Assembly (NCBI GenBank): GCA_965644295.1
Contig: CBFFRP010000249.1
Location: 1-64,000 of the forward strand
DNA length: 64,000 nt
Direction: 5' to 3'
Origin: Paraphysomonas bandaiensis
Lineage: Eukaryota; Protista; Chrysophyceae
Numbering within the stretch: the stretch's first letter is position 1; each line of letters starts with the position of its first letter. Below the pieces are notes generated by a model. It worked only from the letters and a program-made list of their open reading frames with translations. It made no database searches and was not told the origin of the DNA. The position numbers were made by a program, and so were the translations under genes. This document shows positions 1-62,903 of this stretch, piece by piece.

Positions 1-295
1 CTTTATATCATATCACTTGCCTCAGCAATTCAGTAATTTATTAGCGACATTTTGCATGAGATACTAGATAATGCCACACTGTACCCTATGTCCTTATCCC
101 ATTCTTGACACATACTACAAAATATTTAAGGGCAACATTATTATTACGTTGTGACTTCATCAATATACAGCATTTATACACTACAACATGAAGTCACGGA
201 ATGATATTAATATCAATCATATTCACAATCCACACAAGGAAATTTCGGGAAATCCACACTAACCCATCCCATGTACAATAAACACTCTAAACTAT

Positions 296-862
296 TCAAC
301 TATCCCCAGCTGCGCTGACAAGACGGTGCCCACCCAACTGCAGGGAGGCATTCTGCCAAGGCATACTCCCTCTCTGTACATCAATCTTATGTTGTTTCAA
401 TGCCGATCGTAGCCTACATATAATAATTAGAAAAGTAACAGATAACACTATTATAAGACAAATGCACATGCTCTAACAACGTCATTACACCACAAGTACA
501 TGTCAAACGTGAAATATAAATCCACTCAATAGGAGACAAATACAATGTACTTACAATTTCTCGTTGCTATTGTCTTGCACTTTCCGCACCCTCCACGCCC
601 GAACTTCTCCATCACCTCCCTCGCAGTGTGCCCGTTTCTTTCCAATAACTGAACTCTTGTCTTCTGGCGGCAATTGAAAAGTGACTCTTTTCTTCTTACG
701 AGTCTCTGTGGTTATGAACAAGGAGGAGACTGGTGCGTTGTCATCAAACACCAGAGTGATATCGTCATCATCATCACTACTATCTCCCCACGGGCCATCT
801 CCCAACAGCAGAGATTCATGTGTCCTCCCTATCGAAATATTTCCCAACTTCATCGACTGCAT
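296..862 (-). CDS. Small two-exon protein (~141 aa) with an acidic patch and RKKKRVTF (RVxF-like) motif, copy 1
   Basis: 103-codon ORF ending in a GTAAGT donor, then a 141-bp intron with CTAAT branch and TAG acceptor. Exon 2 stays in frame (LRSALKQHKIDVQRGSMPWQNASLQLGGHRLVSAAGDS*). Splicing is inferred. Confidence 0.55.
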
Positions 863-1284
863 TTACTTTACTGTTAGTTTCCTCTTTATATGTCTGTGTA
901 TGTTCTACTATGAATGTAAAACATATTTGACACCTCTGACGAAATTCACATTTCTGTGCAACCAACAAACCCATTTTCCAGTATAGTATTATGTACAGGT
1001 GACGACTGGCACGTTCAGTTCCTTATGTTCCATACACATCATCCCCAGTAGTGCACTGTACTGTACACTCTGCATGCAATTTCTTCATACATTCATATAT
1101 ACAGTACACTGCAGTGTACGTACATGACATACTGCTGCACGAATACAAGACCCACATATACATACATACTTGCTGTACACCATTTCAAAAATTCAAAGAT
1201 ATACATCAAAACATGATACTGCTGCCAAAAATAGTGCTGAATTTGTATTTTTGTTGAAATATTCCCATATCCAGCACTTCATAT

Positions 1285-1588
1285 AGTGCTGGTTTTTGTG
1301 CAGAGGGATTTCTACTGTATGCACACGTGTATTAGGGGCGTCCGTGGTTTGTGAAAAAACTTGTGGATTTGCATGTGAAAGTCCGGACCCGATATAAGTT
1401 TTTCCTAACTTTTTTTAGCGGTCCGGACGCCTCTGAAAAAAACTGTAGAAAAAGTGATTTCCCTAATTTCGCGAAGAATTAGAAATTTCCAGATAACAAC
1501 AGAACGAAAATACTTCATTTTGTTGAAATATTCCCATCGAGTGCTGGTTTTTGTGCAGAGGGATTTCTACTGTATGCACACGTGTATT
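1285..1588. repeat. 49-bp direct repeat (1285-1333, 1540-1588) bracketing an insert in the palindrome spacer; also present in unit 2
   Basis: agtgctggtttttgtgcagagggatttctactgtatgcacacgtgtatt occurs twice, 255 bp apart. The unit 3 spacer has one copy and no insert. Confidence 0.85.
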
Positions 1589-1857
1589 GTATGTATATGT
1601 AGTGTACGTATGGTAGTTAAGTTCTTGTGGTGTCGTTGAAGAAACTGCAGAGTGTACAGTACAGTGCACTACTGGGGATGATGTGTATGGAACATAAGGA
1701 ACTGAACGTGCCAGTCGTCACCTGTACATAATACTATACTGGAAAATGGGTTTGTTGGTTGCACAGAAATGTGAATTTCGTCAGAGGTGTCAAATATGTT
1801 TTACATTCATAGTAGAACATACACAGACATATAAAGAGGAAACTAACAGTAAAGTAA

Positions 1858-2426
1858 ATGCAGTCGATGAAGTTGGGAAATATTTCGATAGGGAGGACAC
1901 ATGAATCTCTGCTGTTGGGAGATGGCCCGTGGGGAGATAGTAGTGATGATGATGACGATATCACTCTGGTGTTTGATGACAACGCACCAGTCTCCTCCTT
2001 GTTCATAACCACAGAGACTCGTAAGAAGAAAAGAGTCACTTTTCAATTGCCGCCAGAAGACAAGAGTTCAGTTATTGGAAAGAAACGGGCACACTGCGAG
2101 GGAGGTATGGAGAAGTTCGGGCGTGGAGGGTGCGGAAAGTGCAAGACAATAGCAACGAGAAATTGTAAGTACATTGTATTTGTCTCCTATTGAGTGGATT
2201 TATATTTCACGTTTGACATGTACTTGTGGTGTAATGACGTTGTTAGAGCATGTGCATTTGTCTTATAATAGTGTTATCTGTTACTTTTCTAATTATTATA
2301 TGTAGGCTACGATCGGCATTGAAACAACATAAGATTGATGTACAGAGAGGGAGTATTATGCCTTGGCAGAATGCCTCCCTGCAGTTGGGTGGGCACCGTC
2401 TTGTCAGCGCAGCTGGGGATAGTTGA
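1858..2426 (+). pseudogene. Copy 2 of the small RVxF-motif gene, with a 1-bp deletion (frameshift)
   Basis: ggaggtatgg at ~2101-2110 versus ggaggtgatgg in intact copies, giving a 111-aa alternative ORF (1858-2193). It also has an in-frame tat insertion in exon 2. Confidence 0.5.
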
Positions 2427-3959
2427 ATAGTTTAGAGTGTTTATTGTACATGGGATAGGTTAGTGTGGATTTCCCGAAATTTACTTGTGTGGATTGTGAA
2501 TATGATTGATATTAATATCATTCCGTACTTCATGTTGTAGTGTATAAATGCTGTATATTGATGAAGTCACAACGTAATAATAATGTTGCCCTTAAATATT
2601 TTGTAGTATGTGTCAAGAATGTCAAGAATGGGATAAGGGCATAGGGTACAGTGTGGCAGTATCTAGTATCTAATGCAAAATGTCGCTAATATATTGCTCA
2701 ATACTTAAGCTAGCGATAGAATATGAAGCACTGAAAACTATTAGGATTCAGCTTAATACAAGATTGTATCTGTGACTTATAGTGTTCAATGAAATTTAGA
2801 GAGTATCTGTCAAAGATACATGATCGTCATCATAACGTCGTCATTATCAGTTACACTTCTAACTATTCCGTTGTACATGATAGTTATGCTATATATTGTT
2901 ATTTGAAATTCTCACTGTACCGTGTTCATTACTTACACTCTAATAGTCACAACATTGTTTCACTATTACTAAGATCAGTTCTTTATTAAAACTGGATATT
3001 TAGATTTCTGTTGCCCGGGTAGCATAAACAATTGTAATGTGTGTAATATGTAATAATAGAAGAATAGAATGACTGGTAATAGAAGAATACAGAAATGGTT
3101 AACAGTATTTTGAGAAACTGATATTTATTAACAGATTAAAAAATTCTTAACCTTAGCAAAGACTAAATTTTTTGTTCAATCATGTCATTTTCTAATAGCC
3201 CTTGTGAAAATATGTATATCTACTTCCAGCTTTCAGCTGCTTCCTGGTTATCATCAGAGGTAATGTTTCAAATTACTGTTATATCTACATAAGCGAATGG
3301 CAATTTGTAGTAGTAGATTAACTTCAAACAATAAATCCCGAAATATAATAATAGCAACTACTGTGTACACCTACCGCAGAAGTATGCTAAGGAAATACTA
3401 ACTGTGAGTTATTGAAATTTGTACATAAATGAGTTGATGAATTTCAGAAAATATTGTCGCACGAAGATTTTTGATGTCATTGATACAATAATGTAGTCAC
3501 TTCAATATGTTTGTCAACATTTTATTGTTCCAATCTGTCATTACTTTTAACGGCAAAAGAAAAGAGAATCGTAGCTACTTTATTTCACACACTACAGTAG
3601 TTTCTGCTTTTCCTTCTACAGTATTAGAATTATAGGCAGTAAGACGACATGTAATACATACTTTACACTACTTTATATCATATCACTTGCCTCAGCAATT
3701 CAGTAATTTATTAGCGACATTTTGCATGAGATACTAGATAATGCCACACTGTACCCTATGTCCTTATCCCATTCTTGACACATACTACAAAATATTTAAG
3801 GGCAACATTATTATTACGTTGTGACTTCATCAATATACAGCATTTATACACTACAACATGAAGTCACGGAATGATATCAATCATATTCACAATCCACACA
3901 AGGAAATTTCGGGAAATCCACACTAACCCATCCCATGTACAATAAACACTCTAAACTAT

Positions 3960-4526
3960 TCAACTATCCCCAGCTGCGCTGACAAGACGGTGCCCACCCA
4001 ACTGCAGGGAGGCATTCTGCCAAGGCATACTCCCTCTCTGTACATCAATCTTATGTTGTTTCAATGCCGATCGTAGCCTACATATAATAATTAGAAAAGT
4101 AACAGATAACACTATTATAAGACAAATGCACATGCTCTAACAACGTCATTACACCACAAGTACATGTCAAACGTGAAATATAAATCCACTCAATAGGAGA
4201 CAAATACAATGTACTTACAATTTCTCGTTGCTATTGTCTTGCACTTTCCGCACCCTCCACGCCCGAACTTCTCCATCACCTCCCTCGCAGTGTGCCCGTT
4301 TCTTTCCAATAACTGAACTCTTGTCTTCTGGCGGCAATTGAAAAGTGACTCTTTTCTTCTTACGAGTCTCTGTGGTTATGAACAAGGAGGAGACTGGTGC
4401 GTTGTCATCAAACACCAGAGTGATATCGTCATCATCATCACTACTATCTCCCCACGGGCCATCTCCCAACAGCAGAGATTCATGTGTCCTCCCTATCGAA
4501 ATATTTCCCAACTTCATCGACTGCAT
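3960..4526 (-). CDS. Small RVxF-motif protein, copy 3
   Basis: Identical to 296-862. Confidence 0.55.
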
Positions 4527-5521
4527 TTACTTTACTGTTAGTTTCCTCTTTATATGTCTGTGTATGTTCTACTATGAATGTAAAACATATTTGACACCTC
4601 TGACGAAATTCACATTTCTGTGCAACCAACAAACCCATTTTCCAGTATAGTATTATGTACAGGTGACGACTGGCACGTTCAGTTCCTTATGTTCCATACA
4701 CATCATCCCCAGTAGTGCACTGTACTGTACACTCTGCATGCAATTTCTTCATACATTCATATATACAGTACACTGCAGTGTACGTAAATGACATACTGCT
4801 GCACGAATACAAGACCCACATATACATACATACTTGCTGTACACCATTTCAAAAATTCAAAGATATACATCAAAACATGATACTGCTGCCAAAAATAGTG
4901 CTGAATTTGTATTTTTGTTGAAATATTCCCATATCCAGCACTTCATATAGTGCTGGTTTTTGTGCAGAGGGATTTCTACTGTATGCACACGTGTATTAGG
5001 GGCGTCCGTGGTTTGTGAAAAAACTTGTGGATTTGCATGTGAAAGTCCGGACCCGATATAAGTTTTTCCTAACTTTTTTTAGCGGTCCGGACGCCTCTGA
5101 AAAAAACTGTAGAAAAAGTGATTTCCCTAATTTCGCGAAGAATTAGAAATTTCCAGATAACAACAGAACGAAAATACTTCATTTTGTTGAAATATTCCCA
5201 TCGAGTGCTGGTTTTTGTGCAGAGGGATTTCTACTGTATGCACACGTGTATTGTATGTATATGTAGTGTACGTATGGTAGTTAAGTTCTTGTGGTGTCGT
5301 TGAAGAAACTGCAGAGTGTACAGTACAGTGCACTACTGGGGATGATGTGTATGGAACATAAGGAACTGAACGTGCCAGTCGTCACCTGTACATAATACTA
5401 TACTGGAAAATGGGTTTGTTGGTTGCACAGAAATGTGAATTTCGTCAGAGGTGTCAAATATGTTTTACATTCATAGTAGAACATACACAGACATATAAAG
5501 AGGAAACTAACAGTAAAGTAA

Positions 5522-6090
5522 ATGCAGTCGATGAAGTTGGGAAATATTTCGATAGGGAGGACACATGAATCTCTGCTGTTGGGAGATGGCCCGTGGGGAG
5601 ATAGTAGTGATGATGATGACGATATCACTCTGGTGTTTGATGACAACGCACCAGTCTCCTCCTTGTTCATAACCACAGAGACTCGTAAGAAGAAAAGAGT
5701 CACTTTTCAATTGCCGCCAGAAGACAAGAGTTCAGTTATTGGAAAGAAACGGGCACACTGCGAGGGAGGTATGGAGAAGTTCGGGCGTGGAGGGTGCGGA
5801 AAGTGCAAGACAATAGCAACGAGAAATTGTAAGTACATTGTATTTGTCTCCTATTGAGTGGATTTATATTTCACGTTTGACATGTACTTGTGGTGTAATG
5901 ACGTTGTTAGAGCATGTGCATTTGTCTTATAATAGTGTTATCTGTTACTTTTCTAATTATTATATGTAGGCTACGATCGGCATTGAAACAACATAAGATT
6001 GATGTACAGAGAGGGAGTATTATGCCTTGGCAGAATGCCTCCCTGCAGTTGGGTGGGCACCGTCTTGTCAGCGCAGCTGGGGATAGTTGA
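5522..6090 (+). pseudogene. Copy 4 of the small RVxF-motif gene, same frameshift as copy 2
   Basis: Identical to 1858-2426. Confidence 0.5.
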
Positions 6091-7721
6091 ATAGTTTAGA
6101 GTGTTTATTGTACATGGGATGGGTTAGTGTGGATTTCCCGAAATTTCCTTGTGTGGATTGTGAATATGATTGATATTAATATCATTCCGTACTTCATGTT
6201 GTAGTGTATAAATGCTGTATATTGATGAAGTCACAACGTAATAATAATGTTGCCCTTAAATATTTTGTAGTATGTGTCAAGAATGTCAAGAATGGGATAA
6301 GGGCATAGGGTACAGTGTGGCAGTATCTAGTATCTAATGCAAAATGTCGCTAATATATTGCTCAATACTTAAGCTAGCGATAGAATATGAAGCACTGAAA
6401 ACTATTAGGATTCAGCTTAATACAAGATTGTATCTGTGACTTATAGTGTTCAATGAAATTTAGAGAGTATCTGTCAAAGATACATGATCGTCATCATAAC
6501 GTCGTCATTATCAGTTACACTTCTAACTATTCCGTTGTACATGATAGTTATGCTATATATTGTTATTTGAAATTCTCACTGTACCGTGTTCATTACTTAC
6601 ACTCTAATAGTCACAACATTGTTTCACTATTACTAAGATCAGTTCTTTATTAAAACTGGATATTTAGATTTCTGTTGCCCGGGTAGCATAAACAATTGTA
6701 ATGTGTGTAATATGTAATAATAGAAGAATAGAATGACTGGTAATAGAAGAATACAGAAATGGTTAACAGTATTTTGAGAAACTGATATTTCTTAACAGAT
6801 TAAGATCGTGGTATATCTAATATAGTTGGGTAGTTGAGACAACATGAATTTGGCGACTGACAGTGAGTGACAAGTGATGTTGATGTGTTTACTATATGTT
6901 TCCAATTCTTAACCTTAGCAAAGACTAAATTTTTTGTTCAATCATGTCATTTTCTAATAGCCCTTGTGAAAATATGTATATCTACTTCCAGCTTTCAGCT
7001 GCTTCCTGGTTATCATCAGAGGTAATGTTTCAAATTACTGTTATATCTACATAAGCGAATGGCAATTTGTAGTAGTAGATTAACTTCAAACAATAAATCC
7101 CGAAATATAATAATAGCAACTACTGTGTACACCTACCGCAGAAGTATGCTAAGGAAATACTAACTGTGAGTTATTGAAATTTGTACATAAATGAGTTGAT
7201 GAATTTCAGAAAATATTGTCGCACGAAGATTTTTGATGTCATTGATACAATAATGTAGTCACTTCAATATGTTTGTCAACATTTTATTGTTCCAATCTGT
7301 CATTACTTTTAACGGCAAAAGAAAAGAGAATCGTAGCTACTTTATTTCACACACTACAGTAGTTTCTGCTTTTCCTTCTACAGTATTAGAATTATAGGCA
7401 GTAAGACGACATGTAATACATACTTTACACTACTTTATATCATATCACTTGCCTCAGCAATTCAGTAATTTATTAGCGACATTTTGCATGAGATACTAGA
7501 TAATGCCACACTGTACCCTATGTCCTTATCCCATTCTTGACACATACTACAAAATATTTAAGGGCAACATTATTATTACGTTGTGACTTCATCAATATAC
7601 AGCATTTATACACTACAACATGAAGTCACGGAATGATATCAATCATATTCACAATCCACACAAGGAAATTTCGGGAAATCCACACTAACCCATCCCATGT
7701 ACAATAAACACTCTAAACTAT

Positions 7722-8288
7722 TCAACTATCCCCAGCTGCGCTGACAAGACGGTGCCCACCCAACTGCAGGGAGGCATTCTGCCAAGGCATACTCCCTCTC
7801 TGTACATCAATCTTATGTTGTTTCAATGCCGATCGTAGCCTACATATAATAATTAGAAAAGTAACAGATAACACTATTATAAGACAAATGCACATGCTCT
7901 AACAACGTCATTACACCACAAGTACATGTCAAACGTGAAATATAAATCCACTCAATAGGAGACAAATACAATGTACTTACAATTTCTCGTTGCTATTGTC
8001 TTGCACTTTCCGCACCCTCCACGCCCGAACTTCTCCATCACCTCCCTCGCAGTGTGCCCGTTTCTTTCCAATAACTGAACTCTTGTCTTCTGGCGGCAAT
8101 TGAAAAGTGACTCTTTTCTTCTTACGAGTCTCTGTGGTTATGAACAAGGAGGAGACTGGTGCGTTGTCATCAAACACCAGAGTGATATCGTCATCATCAT
8201 CACTACTATCTCCCCACGGGCCATCTCCCAACAGCAGAGATTCATGTGTCCTCCCTATCGAAATATTTCCCAACTTCATCGACTGCAT
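7722..8288 (-). CDS. Small RVxF-motif protein, copy 5
   Basis: Identical to 296-862. Confidence 0.55.
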
Positions 8289-8720
8289 TTACTTTACTGT
8301 TAGTTTCCTCTTTATATGTCTGTGTATGTTCTACTATGAATGTAAAACATATTTGACACCTCTGACGAAATTCACATTTCTGTGCAACCAACAAACCCAT
8401 TTTCCAGTATAGTATTATGTACAGGTGACGACTGGCACGTTCAGTTCCTTATGTTCCATACACATCATCCCCAGTAGTGCACTGTACTGTACACTCTGCA
8501 GTTTCTTCAACGACACCACAAGAACTTAACTAATACAAAATGGGGTTATTTTGGAGGTGTGGTCGAAAGAAGTCTTTTTTTTGAAAGAAGTGTGAAATCA
8601 TGAACTGCGAGTGCTGACGATGAACTAGCAAGACTGATTCATGAACTGCAACAAGTTTTAACACACATATCACCATATTACACTACAAACCAAAGCATAT
8701 TATGAGAACATTGTATTGAT

Positions 8721-10589
8721 ATGATGAGTAGTCATCTGTCTCATTCTGAATCTGGCGAAGAAAGTGACTTAGACGCTATTGCAACAAAGTTATCTGAGGT
8801 GGAACCTCCATATGTTGCTGAAGGGTCTTGGATTCAAGTCAATATAAGAGGAATAAGTGACTACAACAAGAAAACAGCATCGCCACATGTTAAAGTGGCT
8901 TTGGTAGACTCATTTTTTGTTAATGTCAAGTGTGTAGTGTACCTGTATGTGATATATGATACTCACATCTATTCTGTTGACAGATACCTCAAAGCGAAAT
9001 ACAGTACAGTGGATTTAATTCCTTTGATTTTCCACAAGCTTCGTGGGTTCGCAACGGCAGCAGAAGAAATTGAGGAGACTAAAAGTAGTAGTAGGGCTCT
9101 GGAGGCCCACCCTTGTTTGAAATTAGATTTCTCACGAGGCATTCTCTTCAAGACAACCACTGAGAAATATTGGACAAAAGGTAATATAAAAACTTAATGC
9201 AATATGTTTCCTTTGCGAAGCTAGTAATATTATTCCCAGGCTACGAGGTGACTGGCACAAATGAAGAGCTTAAAGTTCCAGTGTTCCGTAGTTCCCGCCA
9301 ATTGTTCCCTTTCATTTGCATCGCGGCTGTAAACTTCCCTATGGAATACATCACAGAGTCCGATGTTATTAGGAGGTGGTTGATATTGACAGAAATGTGC
9401 GACAACCCTAACATAACGAAGAAAGAGATGGTTGAATTTCTTTCCCAGGTACGGTATGCTACCCTTCAAGACTTCCATCATTATAACTTAATATTGTACA
9501 TAGGATACCACTCATTTCAACAACTGCTTACTTCTTCGTAGTGGGTTGGATAAATTTCCAAATATTTTCTGGTCCAAATGTATGCGGAGTGTCATAGATA
9601 GGATGGAACCAAACTCTTCGATGGACCCATTGCCGTGCTTGACGTACTTGCGGGATAAAAGCTTTGGTAATAAGACCAAACTTAGTAATACATTCATCGA
9701 TAAGTGTATGGGAAAGATCCAGACCATATGCCATCCAGCAACCAATGCTGAGATTGAATCTGTGTTAGGTTTGAATGAGCATGTCGCTTATACTGAAAAA
9801 CGCAATATGGTGTCGAAGTTAATTAGTGCCTTTGAGTTGGGATCAGGCGGTATAACTAATGAGCAGCTTCAAGTTGCCATGCGTTTGCCGAGTAATGTGG
9901 TCATACTTCCAGCAGGGAACAAAGTCCTCCGGCATTTTCTCGCTACTATATTTTTTAATCGTAACTCTAATGAGGATGAAGCGCCTGGGAACCCATTCGA
10001 ATGGGATTCGGGAGTAAAGCAGTGGGTCCTTAAAAGCCCTAATTGGTTTAATGAGAGCCCATTACTGTTCCCTTCCTACGAAATGATCGTGGAACTGATG
10101 ATGAAAAGAAGAAAAGATCTTCCAAAGCGGGTATTTCGCACAAATGTGGTACCATCAATCTCAAGTCTCCCTATAACGACATGCCCTGAAACATATCCCC
10201 TCCCGAACACGCATCCGTGTCTTTTGCCCACAACCTACTTAGGGCCCCAGAATATTTCATCTTATTCAACTACACAGTGGCAAAGGGATCGATCTTGCAG
10301 CCAAGAACATAAATCTCAAAGTCTTGAGCATCACCATCAAAGTACTTCTGATAGTCGGAATGATAGACCTTATCATACCGCTCCGCATCGCTCTCGCAGC
10401 CGGGATACCAGGCCATTTCGTAGCAGTCGGCACGACAGGTCTCATAGCAGACGACGTGATAGGTCCCATCACAGGAGTCATGGTAAAAGACATGATAGGT
10501 CCCGTGGCAGGTCTCATGGCAGAAGGCATGAGGCGTCTTCTGATCACCATCGCCATCACAGCAGCAGGCAGGACAGAAGTAGGTATTGA
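8721..10589 (+). CDS. Transposon passenger gene of unknown function (~571-584 aa) with an Arg/Ser/His-rich C-terminal tail
   Basis: Three ORF pieces join in frame through GT-AG introns 9181-9239 and 9449-9503, with a possible 39-bp intron at 8945-8983. The ATG is 8 bp inside the left TIR. Confidence 0.7.
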
Positions 10590-10633
10590 TAGGCTGTGAA
10601 TGTAGTTTATATAGGTTTTGTTTATTTTCTTGA

Positions 10634-10716
10634 TTTGTTTTCGATTTTGCTTTGTCCTCTGTTTTGTTTTCGATTTTGCTTTGACCTCTGTTTTGTTTTC
10701 GATTTTCTTTAACCTC
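10634..10716. repeat. ~3 copies of a 29-bp T-rich unit downstream of the passenger gene
   Basis: tcgatt recurs at 10641, 10670 and 10699. Confidence 0.8.
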
Positions 10717-10960
10717 GACACACATATCTCGATTTTCGTTCTTTAATACTTTCAAATTAATGTGAAATTTAGCATCTGTTGGGGATGATCATTTCGATTA
10801 GGGTCAGAATTTTACTACATACTTCCTAAACCTTAAATTTTCTTAATTATTGCAATAATCCATAAGGGACTAAGATCTAAGATTCCTTACATCATAGCTA
10901 AATTAACCATTAACCTATTTCCACGTAAAACTAGCATTACATAGCTATGGAGTACCATAA

Positions 10961-11998
10961 CTACTCAGGAATTTCATATTCTTTAACCCAGGCAATATCG
11001 GCGTTGCTAATAGTAAACCCAGCATCTTGATATAGACGGCAGCCAATGGAAGGTGTCACACAGTTGAATAACGCTTCCTCAAACTGTTCTTTCAGTGGAT
11101 GGTCCATGGACACTTCTCCCCAATGATTACGAATATAATGTTTAGCTAAATGAAAAACACGTTCAATAGGGTTCAGGTCAAATGAATATGGTGGAAGGAA
11201 GAGAACTCGGACACCACGAGCCAAACATAATGCCACCACAGCTGCTTTGAGATGAGTTGCAGCATTATCCATCACCAATATGCTCATCGGTACCGGTTCG
11301 GTGGAGTAGGGATCGTCTGCTCTATTCATCAAGGGAAGAATGTCTGTCTCCAGCGCAAAAAGAAATAGGTCTCCATCCACAATATCAAAAGTAGACACTG
11401 ACAACACCCCGTACATAGCCATAGATGTCACTGCAGAGCACGATACACGATCCCCTAATGTACTTCTCACCCATGCTCGTTCGCCTGCTTGGCTCCAGCC
11501 ACGACGTCGCTTTGCCTCCAGCGCACTAATATGTGACTCATCAACAAACACATACTCTCGTGCTGACACAGTTAATTCTCCAGTGACATGTTCTCTCCAT
11601 AGATCCCGCAAACCTTCGTTACGTTCTCTAGCCATTACCGAAATAGCTTTGGAGCTGTAACCAATACGAGCAAGACTATCTCTAACTTCCCAGGTTTCAT
11701 AAATATAACCATTTTCCATGTAAATCAACTCGGCTACTTCTCTCATGAACAGGGTGGGCTCCGTTTCGATACAAATCCTCGCAAAAATAAGGTCTTCATC
11801 TCTCATTTTTCGGTTTAGTGTTGTGCGAACTCGCTTTGGACCAAGCAAACCATGTTCACGTATCAAAAACCACCAATTACGAAGGCTGTTGACTGAAGGG
11901 CCTAGTGTTTCTGATATTAATCTCAAATTACTTTCAGTCAATCCCCGCTCAATCAGCAGCTGGATTGCTCTTTCCCTGATTTCTTTACCCCAGGTCAT
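10961..11998 (-). CDS. IS630/Tc1-like DD34E transposase, intact, intronless (345 aa)
   Basis: N-terminal HTH-like region; VFVDESH, VMDNAATH and LPPYSFDLNPIE, with 34 residues between the second D and the E. Confidence 0.95.
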   Translation of the reverse strand: MTWGKEIRERAIQLLIERGLTESNLRLISETLGPSVNSLRNWWFLIREHGLLGPKRVRTTLNRKMRDEDLIFARICIETEPTLFMREVAELIYMENGYIYETWEVRDSLARIGYSSKAISVMARERNEGLRDLWREHVTGELTVSAREYVFVDESHISALEAKRRRGWSQAGERAWVRSTLGDRVSCSAVTSMAMYGVLSVSTFDIVDGDLFLFALETDILPLMNRADDPYSTEPVPMSILVMDNAATHLKAAVVALCLARGVRVLFLPPYSFDLNPIERVFHLAKHYIRNHWGEVSMDHPLKEQFEEALFNCVTPSIGCRLYQDAGFTISNADIAWVKEYEIPE

Positions 11999-12708
11999 AG
12001 TAATAACACACTAGTATACATACATAACAAAATGTTCTCATAATATGCTTTGGTTTGTAGTGTAATATGGTGATATGTGTGTTAAAACTTGTTGCAGTTC
12101 ATGAATCAGTCTTGCTAGTTCATCGTCAGCACTCGCAGTTCATGATTTCACACTTCTTTCAAAAAAAAGACTTCTTTCGACCACACCTCCAAAATAACCC
12201 CATTTTGTCTTACCATACGTACACTACATATACATACAATACACGTGTGCATACAGTAGAAATCCCTCTGCACAAAAACCAGCACTATATGAAGTGCTGG
12301 ATATGGGAATATTTCAACAAAAATACAAATTCAGCACTATTTTTGGCAGCAGTATCATGTTTTGATGTATATCTTTGAATTTTTGAAATGGTGTACAGCA
12401 AGTATGTATGTATATGTGGGTCTTGTATTCGTGCAGCAGTATGTCATGTACGTACACTGCAGTGTACTGTATATATGAATGTATGAAGAAATTGCATGCA
12501 GAGTGTACAGTACAGTGCACTACTGGGGATGATGTGTATGGAACATAAGGAACTGAACGTGCCAGTCGTCACCTGTACATAATACTATACTGGAAAATGG
12601 GTTTGTTGGTTGCACAGAAATGTGAATTTCGTCAGAGGTGTCAAATATGTTTTACATTCATAGTAGAACATACACAGACATATAAAGAGGAAACTAACAG
12701 TAAAGTAA

Positions 12709-13275
12709 ATGCAGTCGATGAAGTTGGGAAATATTTCGATAGGGAGGACACATGAATCTCTGCTGTTGGGAGATGGCCCGTGGGGAGATAGTAGTGATGA
12801 TGATGACGATATCACTCTGGTGTTTGATGACAACGCACCAGTCTCCTCCTTGTTCATAACCACAGAGACTCGTAAGAAGAAAAGAGTCACTTTTCAATTG
12901 CCGCCAGAAGACAAGAGTTCAGGTATTGGAAAGAAACGGGCACACTGCGAGGGAGGTGATGGAGAAGTTCGGGCGTGGAGGGTGCGGAAAGTGCAAGACA
13001 ATAGCAACGAGAAATTGTAAGTACATTGTATTTGTCTCCTATTGAGTGGATTTATATTTCACGTTTGACATGTACTTGTGGTGTAATGACGTTGTTAGAG
13101 CATGTGCATTTGTCTTATAATAGTGTTATCTGTTACTTTTCTAATTATTATATGTAGGCTACGATCGGCTTTGAAACAACATAAGATTGATGTACAGAGA
13201 GGGAGTATGCCTTGGCAGAATGCCTCCCTGCAATTGGGTGGGCACCGTCTTGTCAGCGCAGCTGGGGATAGTTGA
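12709..13275 (+). CDS. Small RVxF-motif protein, copy 6 (exons 12709-13016, 13158-13275)
   Basis: Intact frame. It differs from the other copies by one V>G change in exon 1 and two synonymous changes in exon 2 (GCA/GCT, CAG/CAA). Confidence 0.6.
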
Positions 13276-14137
13276 ATAGTTTAGAGTGTTTATTGTACAT
13301 GGGATAGGTTTGTGTGGATTTCCCGAAATTTCCTTGTGTGGATTGTGAATATGATTGATATCATTCCGTGACTTCATGTTGTAGTGTATAAATGCTGTAT
13401 ATTGATGAAGTCACAACGTAGTAGTAATATGTGAAAGTGATTAATAAGGTTAACTCTAGGGTAATGTCCTATTCGTATTGGTGTGTCAATGACTAATGTT
13501 TATCGCTTTCTCCTATCCTGTATTTTCTGTAACAATGAAATACAGAATCTAGAATATAACGACAAGAGGAGTAGGAATAAAAAGTATTATTACAATCTTA
13601 CTAATTCTCTGTTTATTTGTAGGTGATCAAAAGATGTATTAAATTAGGGTATTAAAGTATTTTCGTTGAAGACAGTATCACATGAATTATTTGAATTGTG
13701 TTCATAAAATTGAAATGTATAACTGTATAAGATTGTGACTATCTATGACCTGATAATGTTGGTTGATTAGAACTATGGGATGGCAATAAATGTTATGAGG
13801 TGTTGAGTGCGTTACACTGTCCTAATTCCTGATGTCAGCTTAGGGTATTGGATACGCCTTAAACTCCATTCTAATTGGTGTGTGGTAATTATTACCAAAG
13901 CGTTCTGAAGTACTAAATACCTTCCAAAACGACATTGTAACACATGGGGCTATATACATCAGTCGGTTAGGTAGAATGCCGTCGAAAACAACGTATAAGA
14001 GTATATCATGAAGTAAAAAAGAATTTCTTCACATTAAATACAACAACATTTACACAACAATATAAGACAGTGTTTGTGTAGACTACACTTTATTCGACAA
14101 TTGTGTCCTGCGCAATTAAATTAAAGCAACAACGTTT

Positions 14138-21879: not shown

Positions 21880-22327
21880 AATGAGCAGGTACGTCATCTA
21901 GCTCGCATATTTCTAAAATCGCAATCAATGCATCATATACAGTCCCAACTAACATATCCAAACGCTCAGGGGAGATACGATCAGGAAACCCTACACCAGT
22001 TGGTGTAAACTCTTGATCTTATATTGATGCACGCTGAACAACCATCTACTTCAGATGGCATTCATTTGATGCCTTCTTAAAAGACTCCCATCGTTCAACA
22101 GGCATTGCAACTGTTTCCTTATTAAGGTCACTATGAACTTGAATTCAAACACTTTGAAAGGCTTGAATCTCTACAATGTGTTCAACTTCTGGCCTTACAT
22201 GGCGATCATCATCACCTCGAGATAGCACTTGAACAAAGTACAAGAAGGAGCCGATAGTCGTAAAGTCATTCAATGATGGCATACCGTCACGAAGACGTTT
22301 CGCAATCTTGTCAAGAGGGATACTGAT
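21880..22327 (-). pseudogene. Decayed coding fragment with three in-frame stops; contains EVEHIVEIQ
   Basis: Manual translation gives ~150 protein-like codons (ISIPLDKIAKRLRDGMPSL...EVEHIVEIQAFQSV*...) and is truncated at the microsatellite. Confidence 0.3.
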
Positions 22328-22329
22328 CG

Positions 22330-22331
<2 letters not shown>

Positions 22332-22361
<30 letters not shown>

Positions 22362-22855
22362 TGTATGTATGTATGTATGTATGTATGTATGTATGTATGT
22401 ATGTATGTATGTATGTATGTATGTATGTATGTATGTATGTATGTATGTATGTATGTATGTATGTATGTATGTATGTATGTATGTATGTATGTATGTATGT
22501 ATGTATGTATGTATGTATGTATGTATGCATGTATGTATGTATGTATGTATGTGTGTATGTATGTATGTATGTATGTATGTATGTATGTATGTATGTATGT
22601 ATGTATGTATGTATGTATGTATGTATGTATGTATGTATGTATGTATGTATGTATGTATGTATGTATGTATGTATGTATGTATGTATGTATGTATGTATGT
22701 ATGTATGTATGTATGTATGTATGTATGTATGTATGTATGTATGTATGTATGTATGTATGTATGTATGTATGTATGTATGTATGTATGTATGTATGTATGT
22801 ATGTATGTATGTATGTATGTATGTATGTATGTATGTATGTATGTATGTATGTATG
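22332..22855. repeat. (TATG)n microsatellite, ~130 units
   Basis: Direct reading; two variant units near 22527-22555. Confidence 0.99.
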
Positions 22856-22924
22856 GCTTAAGGTGGTGTATGTGTATATTCATTCTTGAGTTTGATCCTC
22901 GTGCTGAAGTAGTAGTGAGGAATC

Positions 22925-60192: not shown

Positions 60193-61129
60193 AATTTTCT
60201 ATCACGAAGAGAAATACGTACTTGGATCGGAAATACAACACTGATACTACAGATCAATCAAACACTCACGGATCCAGTTCGCCCGTTGTCCTCCGTTCAA
60301 ACTACACTACAGGTAGGCAAAAGACAAGTCTCTTTGCAAATACTACAGAAATCGTTAGTGATAGAAAATTATGGTGTCTCCCTACAACACAATAATACTA
60401 CAGCTGATCATGTTCTACTGTACACTCTCACTCGTATCCTACAGAGTCACACATGTACAATGACTGAAAACATAATCACTGTAACAAAAACGAATGTGCA
60501 CGTTGACTTTCATTTCCATCACTCGAAGACTTCTATACCGAATCATCATTTAGCTCTACGTCCTACACCGTATTGTCATCATACACCGTATAATGGTATA
60601 CCGTTACCCTACTGTAGCTGTACACTGTATATCCTGTATGCTACACACCAGCTGTATAGTGAAGTATACAGCTGTATACTACCAAGCCAAGCTCTCACTC
60701 CAATGATAGCTTACCTCCTATACGGGAATGACAACACTCTTGTCCAAACATGTTGTACACGTTCCAAGCCCCATTGCTTGGCCTTAAAATTCCCATCTTG
60801 TCCAACTGTCTCAGTTATAAATCATGTGCCTGCACCACTGCAACTGCCCCATATTGACAGCGTAACTAATTACTGCGTGCGGCCCTCTAGTGGGTGCTGC
60901 CGAGTGTTGCGACCGCGCACCTCTACCTATGTACACATTGCTTAGTTCAGCAGTTCCCTACTCTGGGTTCTCACCGCATAATCAGCGCTGAATACCGTGT
61001 GATAATGATGTAACTAGTTGGGTTCAGTAGGTAGCTAGCAAATAACGTATGGGACTTAAATCAAGTATTAGTTAGGTACCCACCCGGCCCCCACCTGGAT
61101 CTACCGAAGTACGCGCTCAGAATGGGGCA

Positions 61130-61970
61130 CCTATATGACACTGTGAGTCCTATACGGCACTGTGAGTCCTATACGGCACTGTGAGTCCTATACGGCACTG
61201 TGAGTCCTATATGGCACTGTGAGTCCTATACGGCACTGTGAGTCCTATACGGCACTGTGAGTCCTATATGGCACTGTGAGTCCTATACGGCACTGTGAGT
61301 CCTATACGGCACTGTGAGTCCTATATGGCACTGTGAGTCCTATACGGCACTGTGAGTCCTATACGGCACTGTGAGTCCTACATGACACTGTGAGTCCTAC
61401 ATGACACTGTGAGTCCTATACGGCACTGTGAGTCCTATATGGCACTGTGAGTCCTATATGGCACTGTGAGTCCTATACGGCACTGTGAGTCCTATATGGC
61501 ACTGTGTGTCCTATACGGCACTGTGAGTCCTATATGACACTGTGAGTCCTATACGGCACTGTGAGTCCTATATGGCACTGTGAGTCCTATACGGCACTGT
61601 GAGTCCTATATGGCACTGTGAGTCCTATACGGCACTGTGAGTCCTATACGGCACTGTGAGTCCTATATGGCACTGTGAGTCCTATACGGCACTGTGAGTC
61701 CTATATGGCACTGTGAGTCCTATACGGCACTGTGAGTCCTATATGGCACTGTGAGTCCTACATGACACTGTGAGTCCTATACGGCACTGTGAGTCCTATA
61801 TGGCACTGTGAGTCCTATACGGCACTGTGAGTCCTATACGGCACTGTGAGTCCTAAATGGCACTGTGAGTCCTATACGGCACTGTGAGTCCTATACGGCA
61901 CTGTGAGTCCTATATGGCACTGTGAGTCCTACATGGCACTGTGAGTCCTACATGGCACTGTGAGTCCTAT
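61130..61970. repeat. 19-bp minisatellite (GGCACTGTGAGTCCTATAC), ~44 copies
   Basis: The 19-bp period is read directly; variants are almost all confined to TATACGG/TATATGG/TACATGA/TATATGA/TACATGG. Confidence 0.98.
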
Positions 61971-62903
61971 TGAAGCGGTTGAACGATAAGGACAGTTAGG
62001 AAAACTGGTTATAATGCAAATTGATTGAGAGATAGCTGCTGTTCGCATGTCAGATCATCTGTGATCAATAGACTCAATACAGCGGACTGTGATTGTAGGA
62101 GAAATCTTTCCGGAATATGAAGGCGTTATATGTTGTGATGTGGCTAGAATAGTAACCACACTAATTATTGATCCGGTGCTAATTTATATACGTATACGGG
62201 ATATATATCGGACTTATGGTAGATGAAGAATAGTAGAAATGAGGTTAGAATGAAGATATAGCTCCAGGGAACAATAATAATGCTAAAGCGTGGTATGTGA
62301 GTTAATAATTTTTGGGTGAGCTGTTACTCTAAAAAGTTAGAAGATTACATTGCACTATAATATTAATTTAATATGGAAATTTATTCACGATAACCTACAG
62401 AACCTGCTCAATGCTGTGGAGAGCGAAAACAATGATGAAATGTAGGTATAGCAGGTATAGTAGTAACGACTCGTAGCCTGATAATTGACCTAAGTAAAAA
62501 TTAAGGTGGAGCCACGGAGCCACCTTATATTACATCTAGCTATTATGAGAGATATTATCTCTTATCTAGTTAGTAATCGATACTACCATTGATAGCATTA
62601 TAATTTGGCACCATTAGCGGTTATCATGCTTTGTACACATACATTGCGTTTAAGCGCTGCATTTCGTACAACTGTAATAGTGGCACCTTCTTGGCGATAT
62701 ATAATATAGCTATCACCAACGTGTCAAAACAATCACAACAAATGAATATTAAGCAAATTTAGTGGAATGTGAGGTGTTATCTACTTTCAGAATCCCGCTT
62801 TTAATTGGATACTGTATATTCAATTCACCAAAAAACTTCGCAGCAGAGTAAATAAAGGTATATTAAACATATATTTCTCGTAACCCACTTCTATACGATT
62901 TCG

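What the first reader, a model, noticed from the sequence alone, without database searches (positions are those of the whole stretch)
8531..12212. Two-gene IS630/Tc1 transposon whose 180-bp TIRs sit directly upstream of both convergent genes
Seen: an intact DD34E transposase (-) and a spliced ~580-aa gene (+) point towards each other. Their ATGs lie 8 bp and 32 bp inside near-identical 180-bp TIRs. The TA duplication is proven by empty sites in the same window (1614-1615, 5278-5279). Known: most Tc1/mariner elements encode only a transposase; multi-ORF DD34E/DD35E elements with long TIRs are described mainly in ciliates (Tec, TBE, Sardine/Thon). Inference: the TIR is an inward-facing promoter that co-expresses both genes, making this a young bipartite element family with a dedicated accessory protein.
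Basis: partly seen in the sequence, partly recalled or inferred. Interest (0 to 1): 0.8.

Follow-up and report, generated by a model that had tools for sequence, protein, structure and literature searches.

The report
Two-gene Tc1/IS630 transposon with partner gene
This is a recently inserted, transcribed cut-and-paste transposon of a marine protist (probably a diatom) that carries, besides its transposase, a second conserved gene of unknown fold. The same second gene accompanies every related transposase examined, and each gene is read inwards from one of two near-identical 180-bp end repeats.

Summary
Window 8533-12210 is a 3678-bp element with TA duplication, two empty sites in the same window, 180-nt TIRs (1 mismatch), an intact DD34E DDE_3/IS630-type transposase (-) and a convergent spliced gene (+). 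RNA contigs correct the gene model: three GT..AG introns (54, 59 and 55 nt) give 566 aa, not about 580.

ORF2 is not a one-off capture. All 16 ORF2-domain matches in the 62.5-Mb genome lie beside, and convergent with, a DDE_3 transposase; none stands alone. Metagenomic elements whose transposases are 55%, 41% and 37% identical carry ORF2 homologues in the same arrangement, with long TIRs abutting both genes. In two of them and in a sister family of this genome the TIR holds an ATG that can start both genes.

Both genes are expressed. The ORF2 transcript begins inside the TIR (at or before position 123) and no RNA contig joins the element to its flanks. The exact start site and promoter activity remain inferred.

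ORF2 has no Pfam, PDB-sequence or fold match. An exhaustive search of 1.84 billion representatives found two relatives.

This scan had already noted sister two-gene Tc1/IS630 families elsewhere in this genome (s1-439151, s1-439139).

Verdict: a new variant of a known kind. ORF2's function is unknown.

The parts
8531..8532 (.). TA target-site duplication, left copy
   Evidence: Empty sites at 1614-1615 and 5278-5279 have a single TA between the same flanks. DNA-run joint 8530>12211.
8533..8712 (+). Left 180-nt TIR. It holds the 5' end and leader of the ORF2 mRNA.
   Evidence: 179/180 identical to the right TIR. Transcript contig L070 starts at 8655, TIR position 123. An RNA contig covers 8683 onward.
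8600..8647 (+). Three ATGAACT motifs at 8600, 8620 and 8641, spaced about 20 nt, just upstream of the observed mRNA 5' end. Candidate protein-binding or promoter elements.
   Evidence: Read from the sequence and conserved in copy 2 and in relic C284. Their function is inferred.
8702..8719 (+). Short upstream ORF (MRTLY*) that starts at TIR position 170 and ends 1 nt before the ORF2 ATG
   Evidence: The same TIR ATG opens an 18-codon uORF (12041-11985, minus strand) that overlaps the transposase ATG out of frame.
8721..8929 (+). ORF2 exon 1
   Evidence: Spliced RNA contig X15 record 2; P0001.
8984..9180 (+). ORF2 exon 2
   Evidence: Joints 8929>8984 and 9178>9238 (cut +2), GT..AG.
9240..9448 (+). 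ORF2 exon 3
   Evidence: Joints in X15 and X16.
9504..10589 (+). ORF2 exon 4 with its stop codon. It holds the conserved C-terminal domain (aa 296-420 of P0001) and the Arg/Ser/His-rich tail.
10590..10960 (.). Spacer holding both 3' UTRs, with a 29-nt tandem repeat at 10634-10716
   Evidence: The ORF2 transcript reaches 10818. Transposase RNA contigs start at 10865. TRF result. Copy 2 has one more 29-nt unit.
10961..11998 (-). Transposase gene, 345 aa, DD34E, unspliced
   Evidence: Pfam DDE_3 1.8e-18. NCBIfam IS630 4.5e-28, 98.6 bits against a cut-off of 100. Invariant D153, D244, E279. Colinear RNA contigs 10865-12060.
12031..12210 (-). Right 180-nt TIR. It holds the leader of the transposase mRNA.
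   Evidence: An RNA contig reaches 12060, with no RNA contig over 12061-12388.
12211..12212 (.). TA target-site duplication, right copy

Best explanation
Window 8533-12210 is an autonomous IS630/Tc1-type cut-and-paste transposon (TA target, DD34E transposase). It belongs to a clade of marine-protist elements that always carry two convergent genes: the transposase and a 500-600 aa partner protein. The partner has a conserved core, a C-terminal alpha/beta domain with no recognisable fold, and a basic Arg/Ser/His(Asp)-rich low-complexity tail.

Shown: each 180-nt TIR abuts one gene. Both genes are transcribed and ORF2 is spliced at three introns. The ORF2 mRNA begins inside the TIR, and no RNA contig links the element to its flanks. 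The two transcripts end in the 370-bp middle spacer without observed overlap. The partner gene co-occurs and co-diverges with the transposase.

Inferred: the identical TIRs act both as transposase substrates and as inward-facing promoter/leader cassettes, so both genes start from the same sequence. The TIR-borne upstream ATG gives a 5-codon uORF before ORF2 but an 18-codon uORF overlapping the transposase start. This may set different translation rates for the two proteins.

Inferred with less confidence: the partner protein is a nuclear factor that the element needs for its own propagation, either helping or regulating transposition. It is not a passive passenger.
For: Element anatomy and TA duplication.

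Transposase family: Pfam DDE_3, NCBIfam IS630 at 98.6 bits, invariant D153/D244/E279.

Expression and splicing: X15 record 2 has three GT..AG joints, the polyA metatranscriptome X16 shows intron 3 spliced and covers the transposase, and X18 covers the ORF2 3' part. Transcript contig L070 has its 5' end at 8655.

Linkage: 16 of 16 ORF2-domain hits in the genome lie next to, and convergent with, a DDE_3 hit. Copy 2 and relics C284 and C358 keep ORF2 pieces.

Relatives: L066 (transposase 55% identical; ORF2 homologue P0069, phmmer E 3e-37), L068 (41%; blastp 8e-25) and L072-74 (37%; hmmsearch 4.5e-24 and 3.8e-13) have the same convergent layout and TIRs of 120-156 nt or more.

Co-divergence: the two closest transposase pairs (window-L066, L072-C134) are also the two closest ORF2 pairs.

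TIR start codons: the TIR carries an ATG that can start both genes in L066, L068 and the C357/C134 family.

Orphan status: no Pfam, NCBIfam or PDB-sequence hit. The C-terminal domain model has pLDDT 86.5 but a best VIA Z of 3.7, no Foldseek hit and atlas TM of at most 0.40.
Against: The 5' ends come from assembled contigs. The Logan contigs stop at 8683 and 12060, TIR position 151 on both sides. DNA runs show the same stops, and the public 3378-nt DNA unitigs span exactly that interval, so these ends are k-mer graph breaks, not start sites. Only one transcriptome contig (L070) places the ORF2 5' end further out, and none does so for the transposase.

Promoter activity was not tested.

Nothing shows what ORF2 does. 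The complex prediction with the transposase gave no verdict, and the C-terminal domain is not consistently basic across homologues.

This subfamily has one intact copy, so current mobility is not shown.
Confidence: 0.75

Rival explanations
1. ORF2 is a passive passenger. It was a host gene captured once by an ancestral element and is carried along without any role for the transposon.
For: ORF2 has no recognisable transposition-related domain. Tc1/mariner elements normally need only the transposase (general knowledge; PMC7325037).
Against: No stand-alone paralogue exists in the genome, since 16 of 16 hits are linked to a transposase. The open frame is kept in lineages whose ORF2 proteins are only 22-29% identical and whose transposases are 34-55% identical, with matching closest pairs. 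The exhaustive search of 1.84 billion representatives found only two relatives. One (P0069) lies beside a related transposase; the other (P0070) sits on a 2.4-kb contig too short to show its neighbours.
Confidence: 0.1
2. The long identical TIRs exist only because the transposase needs extended binding sites (an IR/DR-type arrangement as in Sleeping Beauty). Transcription of both genes starts at ordinary promoters that merely lie near the TIR inner ends, so the symmetry is a by-product.
For: Three spaced ATGAACT motifs in the TIR could be transposase-binding repeats. The start site is not mapped to the base.
Against: Only 8 nt and 32 nt of non-repeat sequence separate the TIRs from the ATGs. 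L070 starts 58 nt inside the TIR. In related elements the start codon itself lies inside the TIR. So at least the leader, and probably the core promoter, must be TIR sequence.
Confidence: 0.15
3. ORF2 is a self-limiting regulator that dampens transposase activity or expression, or a counter-silencing factor, rather than a positive cofactor of the cutting reaction.
For: It is co-expressed from the same leader as the transposase. Its RS/His-rich basic tail is the kind of sequence that sends proteins to nuclear speckles (general knowledge). Its uORF layout favours ORF2 translation over transposase translation.
Against: There is no direct evidence either way. The complex prediction gave no verdict.
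Confidence: 0.3

Closest known systems
IS630/Tc1 (DD34E) transposons, including eukaryotic IS630-like elements of fungi
   Same: TA target duplication, TIRs and a DD34E DDE_3 transposase. The nearest named relatives are fungal transposases at 30-33% identity (Paramyrothecium, Monosporascus). The bacterial IS630 profile scores 98.6 bits. Promoter activity in the terminal sequences is known for Tc1-like elements such as Bari (PMC5570127, PMC6446368).
   Different: There is a second, conserved, convergent gene. The TIRs are 180 nt long and reach to within 8 nt and 32 nt of both start codons. There is no detectable sequence match to the solved Mos1 or Sleeping Beauty transposases.
Ciliate TBE and Tec elements (multi-ORF DD34E elements)
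   Same: A DD34E transposase together with extra ORFs and long TIRs, with one ORF on the opposite strand (PMC7325037).
   Different: Those carry three ORFs and TIRs of about 700 bp, and Tec carries a site-specific recombinase. Here there are two genes, 180-nt TIRs and a TA duplication, and the partner protein has no recombinase or any other Pfam domain. The host encodes silicon transporters and uses the standard stop codons in these genes.
Fanzor1-carrying Mariner elements (PMC3627910)
   Same: Tc1/mariner-type elements with TA duplications that carry an extra protein-coding gene.
   Different: Their extra gene is a TnpB/Fanzor nuclease, an endonuclease or a methyltransferase, and it differs between related elements. 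Here the partner is an orphan protein that co-diverges with the transposase.
Sister two-gene Tc1/IS630 families in the same genome (scan notes s1-439151 and s1-439139; here the C134/C357 family)
   Same: Convergent transposase and partner gene, with TIRs of 200 nt or more abutting both genes and TA-type targets. The partner of the C134/C357 family matches the ORF2 profile (hmmsearch 1.8e-16; domain profile 3.7e-36).
   Different: That family has 13 near-identical copies. Its TIR holds a shared ATG followed by a GT...AG stretch. The window element has one intact copy, and its TIR ATG is only an upstream ORF.

Membership tests
IS630/Tc1/mariner superfamily | TA target-site duplication | tested here: met
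   TA on both sides and a single TA at two empty sites in the window. Joint in a DNA run.
IS630/Tc1/mariner superfamily | Terminal inverted repeats | tested here: met
   180 nt, 179/180 identical.
IS630/Tc1/mariner superfamily | DDE transposase with DD34E spacing | tested here: met
   D153, D244 and E279 are invariant in alignment A4, with 34 residues between the last two. Pfam DDE_3 scores 67.2 bits against a cut-off of 28.6.
Bacterial IS630 family (NCBIfam NF033545 equivalog) | Score above the curated cut-off | tested here: inconclusive
   98.6 bits against a cut-off of 100, covering profile positions 16-279 of 299.
Canonical animal Tc1/mariner (Mos1, Sleeping Beauty type) | Sequence similarity to the solved transposases | tested here: not met
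   No PDB chain at E up to 1. Placement in a reference phylogeny could not be done because no reference sequences were on hand.
Ciliate TBE/Tec elements | Three ORFs, including a recombinase (Tec), and TIRs of about 700 bp (PMC7325037) | tested here: not met
   Two genes and 180-nt TIRs. ORF2 and all its homologues lack any Pfam domain.
Fanzor/TnpB-carrying Mariner elements | Second ORF with a TnpB/Fanzor RuvC-like and zinc-finger motif | tested here: not met
   No Pfam match for ORF2 or for 8 homologous pieces. No PDB profile match.
Two-gene Tc1/IS630 clade of marine protists (proposed here) | ORF2-family gene convergent with a DDE_3 transposase between long TIRs that abut both genes | tested here: met
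   Met in the window element, copy 2, the C134/C357 family (13 copies), L066, L068 and L072-74.

The most novel reading that the evidence does not exclude
The ORF2 family is an obligatory second component of a previously undescribed clade of eukaryotic IS630/Tc1 transposons. It would be a nuclear protein with a new fold that the transposase needs, for example to assemble on the long TIRs or to choose targets. The mirror-image TIRs would have evolved into promoter, leader and sometimes start-codon cassettes that force co-expression of the two components.
Probability: 0.35. Interest if true: 0.75.

Novelty: new variant of a known kind. Interest (0 to 1): 0.62.

Why it matters
Tc1/mariner elements are the textbook one-gene transposon, and their simplicity underlies their use as vectors. 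This clade keeps a second, fast-evolving but always intact protein over deep divergence, and its inverted repeats supply the start of both genes. That points to an unknown requirement or control step in this kind of transposition.

It also yields a new protein family with a confidently modelled domain of no known fold. The TIR is a compact candidate promoter in a group of algae where genetic tools are scarce. The element is transcribed in cultures and in ocean metatranscriptomes, so the proposed experiments are feasible.

Tried and rejected
1. ORF2 as a diverged transposase copy: the profile-profile comparison A1 versus A4 gave probability 0.1. Rejected.

2. ORF2 as a D5/DUF5906-type helicase: this rests only on a language-model feature score of 0.86, below the tool's own threshold. 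ORF2 has no GK[ST] (Walker A) sequence, its homologues share no conserved P-loop motif, and there is no Pfam hit. Rejected.

3. Whole-protein AF2 model: poor (pLDDT 53), and the fold searches on it gave only helical noise with Z of at most 5.7.

4. Complex prediction of transposase with ORF2 1-450: no verdict (score 0.00, controls not run). This is no evidence for or against binding.

5. Metagenome scan with ORF2 peptide patterns: 236 pattern matches, none confirmed. Alignments A1 and A2 were too divergent for the tool.

6. Profile word search with A1: returned only fragments of the same gene.

7. New insertion sites in DNA run X5: one loose end is the old relic at C263, and the other has no match in the genome. 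There is no evidence of insertion polymorphism.

8. Exact look-up of the transposase protein: not on record.

9. Taxon names: cluster look-ups and a paper search for the assembly accession gave none.

10. dN/dS between copies 1 and 2: not meaningful, because copy 2 is dead (a 2-bp insertion in each gene and three nested LTR elements) and differs by only 22 substitutions.

Full report
**Observation**

The inverted-repeat search gives arms 8531-8717 and 12026-12212. Base-by-base comparison puts the element at 8533-12210 (3678 bp), with 180-nt TIRs that differ only at position 2, T versus G.

TA stands on both sides. The reverse strand at 1614-1615 and 5278-5279 reads ...aagaacttaacTAccatacgtacact.... 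This is the left flank, one TA and the right flank, so these are true empty sites. A DNA sequencing run of the organism also contains the joint 8530>12211.

The element sits in the central spacer of the third unit of a palindromic array with a period of about 3.7 kb. The two empty units carry an unrelated extra 255-bp segment about 70 bp away, flanked by a 47-bp direct repeat.

**Transposase**

- The 345-aa ORF at 10961-11998 (minus strand) matches Pfam DDE_3 (1.8e-18).
- It matches the NCBIfam IS630 profile at 98.6 bits, just under the cut-off of 100.
- In a 23-sequence alignment D153, D244 and E279 are invariant, which gives DD34E.
- It has no sequence match to any solved transposase.
- Its nearest named relatives are fungal, at 30-33% identity.

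**ORF2 gene model and expression**

RNA contigs of a culture run (X15) carry three GT..AG joints: 8930-8983 (54 nt, in frame), 9181-9239 and 9449-9503. A polyA marine metatranscriptome (X16) confirms the third joint and covers the transposase without introns. A second metatranscriptome study (X18) covers the ORF2 3' part.

The product is 566 aa. It equals database protein P0001 apart from one residue.

The transcriptome contig L070 that encodes P0001 runs from window 8655 (TIR position 123) to 10818. Transposase RNA contigs run from 10865 to 12060. No overlap of the convergent transcripts was seen.

The Logan contigs end at 8683 and 12060. Both are TIR position 151, that is 30 nt into the repeat. 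The DNA run ends at the same places, and public 3378-nt DNA unitigs span exactly 8683-12060. These ends are therefore k=31 graph breaks, not start sites.

What the RNA data do show:
- Both mRNAs contain TIR sequence.
- The ORF2 mRNA begins at or outside TIR position 123.
- No RNA contig crosses either element boundary.

**Copies in the genome (62.5 Mb, 669 contigs)**

A second copy has 22 substitutions over about 3.7 kb. It is split over four contigs (C610, C638, C219, C37). At two of its three internal breakpoints the adjoining sequences form direct-repeat pairs of 98.7% and 99.4% identity; at the third a 97%-identical pair lies 0.3-0.75 kb away. I read these as three nested LTR retrotransposons. 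The copy also has 2-bp insertions in both genes.

Relics at C284, C358 and C263 (69-90% identical) keep pieces of both genes or of the TIR. An older multi-copy subfamily keeps ORF2 aa 30-116 next to a decayed transposase.

**Is ORF2 a dedicated partner?**

A profile of the C-terminal domain finds 16 places in the genome. Each lies beside, and convergent with, a DDE_3 transposase hit. Thirteen of them belong to a near-identical sister family (C134, C357 and others) whose transposase is 32-36% identical to this one. No stand-alone paralogue was found.

Outside the genome, an exhaustive phmmer search of 1.84 billion representatives found only P0069 (E 3e-37) and P0070 (E 4e-12).
- P0069 lies convergent to a transposase 55% identical to ours on L066.
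- L068 (transposase 41%) carries a 501-aa homologue (blastp 8e-25).
- L072-74 (transposase 37%) carry a three-exon homologue.

All of these have TIRs of 120-156 nt or more abutting both genes. In L066, L068 and the C357 family the TIR contains an ATG that can start both genes. In L066 the six codons MTYSDS are common to both reading frames. The two closest transposase pairs are also the two closest ORF2 pairs.

In the window element the TIR ATG (position 170) instead opens a 5-codon uORF that ends 1 nt before the ORF2 start. On the other side it opens an 18-codon uORF that overlaps the transposase start.

**What ORF2 is**

- No Pfam, NCBIfam or PDB-sequence match was found for it or its homologues.
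- It is unrelated to the transposase.
- The conserved core spans aa 80-420.
- The C-terminal domain (aa 296-420; motifs LP..V, GNPF.W, W.L, W, FP.Y) folds with pLDDT 86.5. It has no structural neighbour: VIA Z of at most 3.7, no Foldseek hit, atlas TM of at most 0.40.
- The tail is Arg/Ser/His-rich with pI 12. Homologues have RD/RS, Ser/His or HHSRSRSPRS tails of similar composition but no sequence conservation.

From general knowledge, such tails send proteins to the nucleus and to nuclear speckles. A nuclear role is therefore inferred, not shown. The complex prediction with the transposase gave no verdict.

**Host**

The element occurs in seawater and marine metagenomes and metatranscriptomes and in culture runs. 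The genome has about seven silicon-transporter genes above the Pfam cut-off, so the host is probably a diatom. This is an inference.

**Literature**

Multi-ORF ITm elements are known in ciliates (PMC7325037) and as Fanzor-carrying Mariner elements (PMC3627910). Terminal promoters are known in Bari and other Tc1-like elements (PMC5570127, PMC6446368). No paper in the library describes IS630-type elements in diatoms or this partner gene.

This scan had already noted sister two-gene families elsewhere in this genome (s1-439151, s1-439139).

**Verdict**

The TIR's promoter function and the partner protein's role are still inferred. I class it as a new variant of a known kind.

Noticed in passing
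window 1-13428: A palindromic array with a period of about 3.66-3.76 kb; its arms are 99-100% identical. The two units without the transposon carry an extra 255-bp segment (about 1334-1588) flanked by a 47-bp direct repeat, which the filled unit lacks. An RNA-run contig covers 8300-8482 at high depth, so the repeat may be transcribed.
   Followed up: partly
L002 (C638), L003 (C37), L004 (C610), L006 (C219): The second copy of the element is cut at element positions of about 872, 2356 and 2688. The inserts' ends form direct-repeat pairs 97-99.4% identical to each other, most likely three nested young LTR retrotransposons. The assembly breaks inside them.
   Followed up: partly
L079 (C134:217500-226500) and L080 (C357:198000-207000): A sister two-gene family with 13 near-identical copies and 200-nt perfect TIRs, inserted in (TACA)n microsatellites. 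Its TIR holds ACCATG followed by a GT...AG stretch, which looks like a shared leader exon and intron.
   Followed up: partly
L007 / L084 (C263:183381-184069): A short derivative of about 650 bp made of the TIR plus the ORF2 5' part and an inverted copy of it. It is a possible non-autonomous (MITE-like) offshoot of this family.
   Followed up: no
window 10634-10716: A 29-nt tandem repeat (2.9 copies) in the spacer that holds both 3' UTRs. Copy 2 has one more unit.
   Followed up: partly
window 22196-22900 and 60978-62100: Long arrays of an 8-bp and a 19-bp tandem repeat.
   Followed up: no
L066:60-767: The metagenomic contig with the closest related element also carries a gene with Pfam PF24764 (rva_4) just outside the TIR. 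IMG names the ORF2 homologue P0069 'flagellar hook-basal body complex protein FliE', which looks like a misannotation.
   Followed up: no
G000 contigs C348, C406, C398, C150, C149, C298, C405: About seven silicon-transporter (PF03842) genes, which suggests that the host is a diatom.
   Followed up: no
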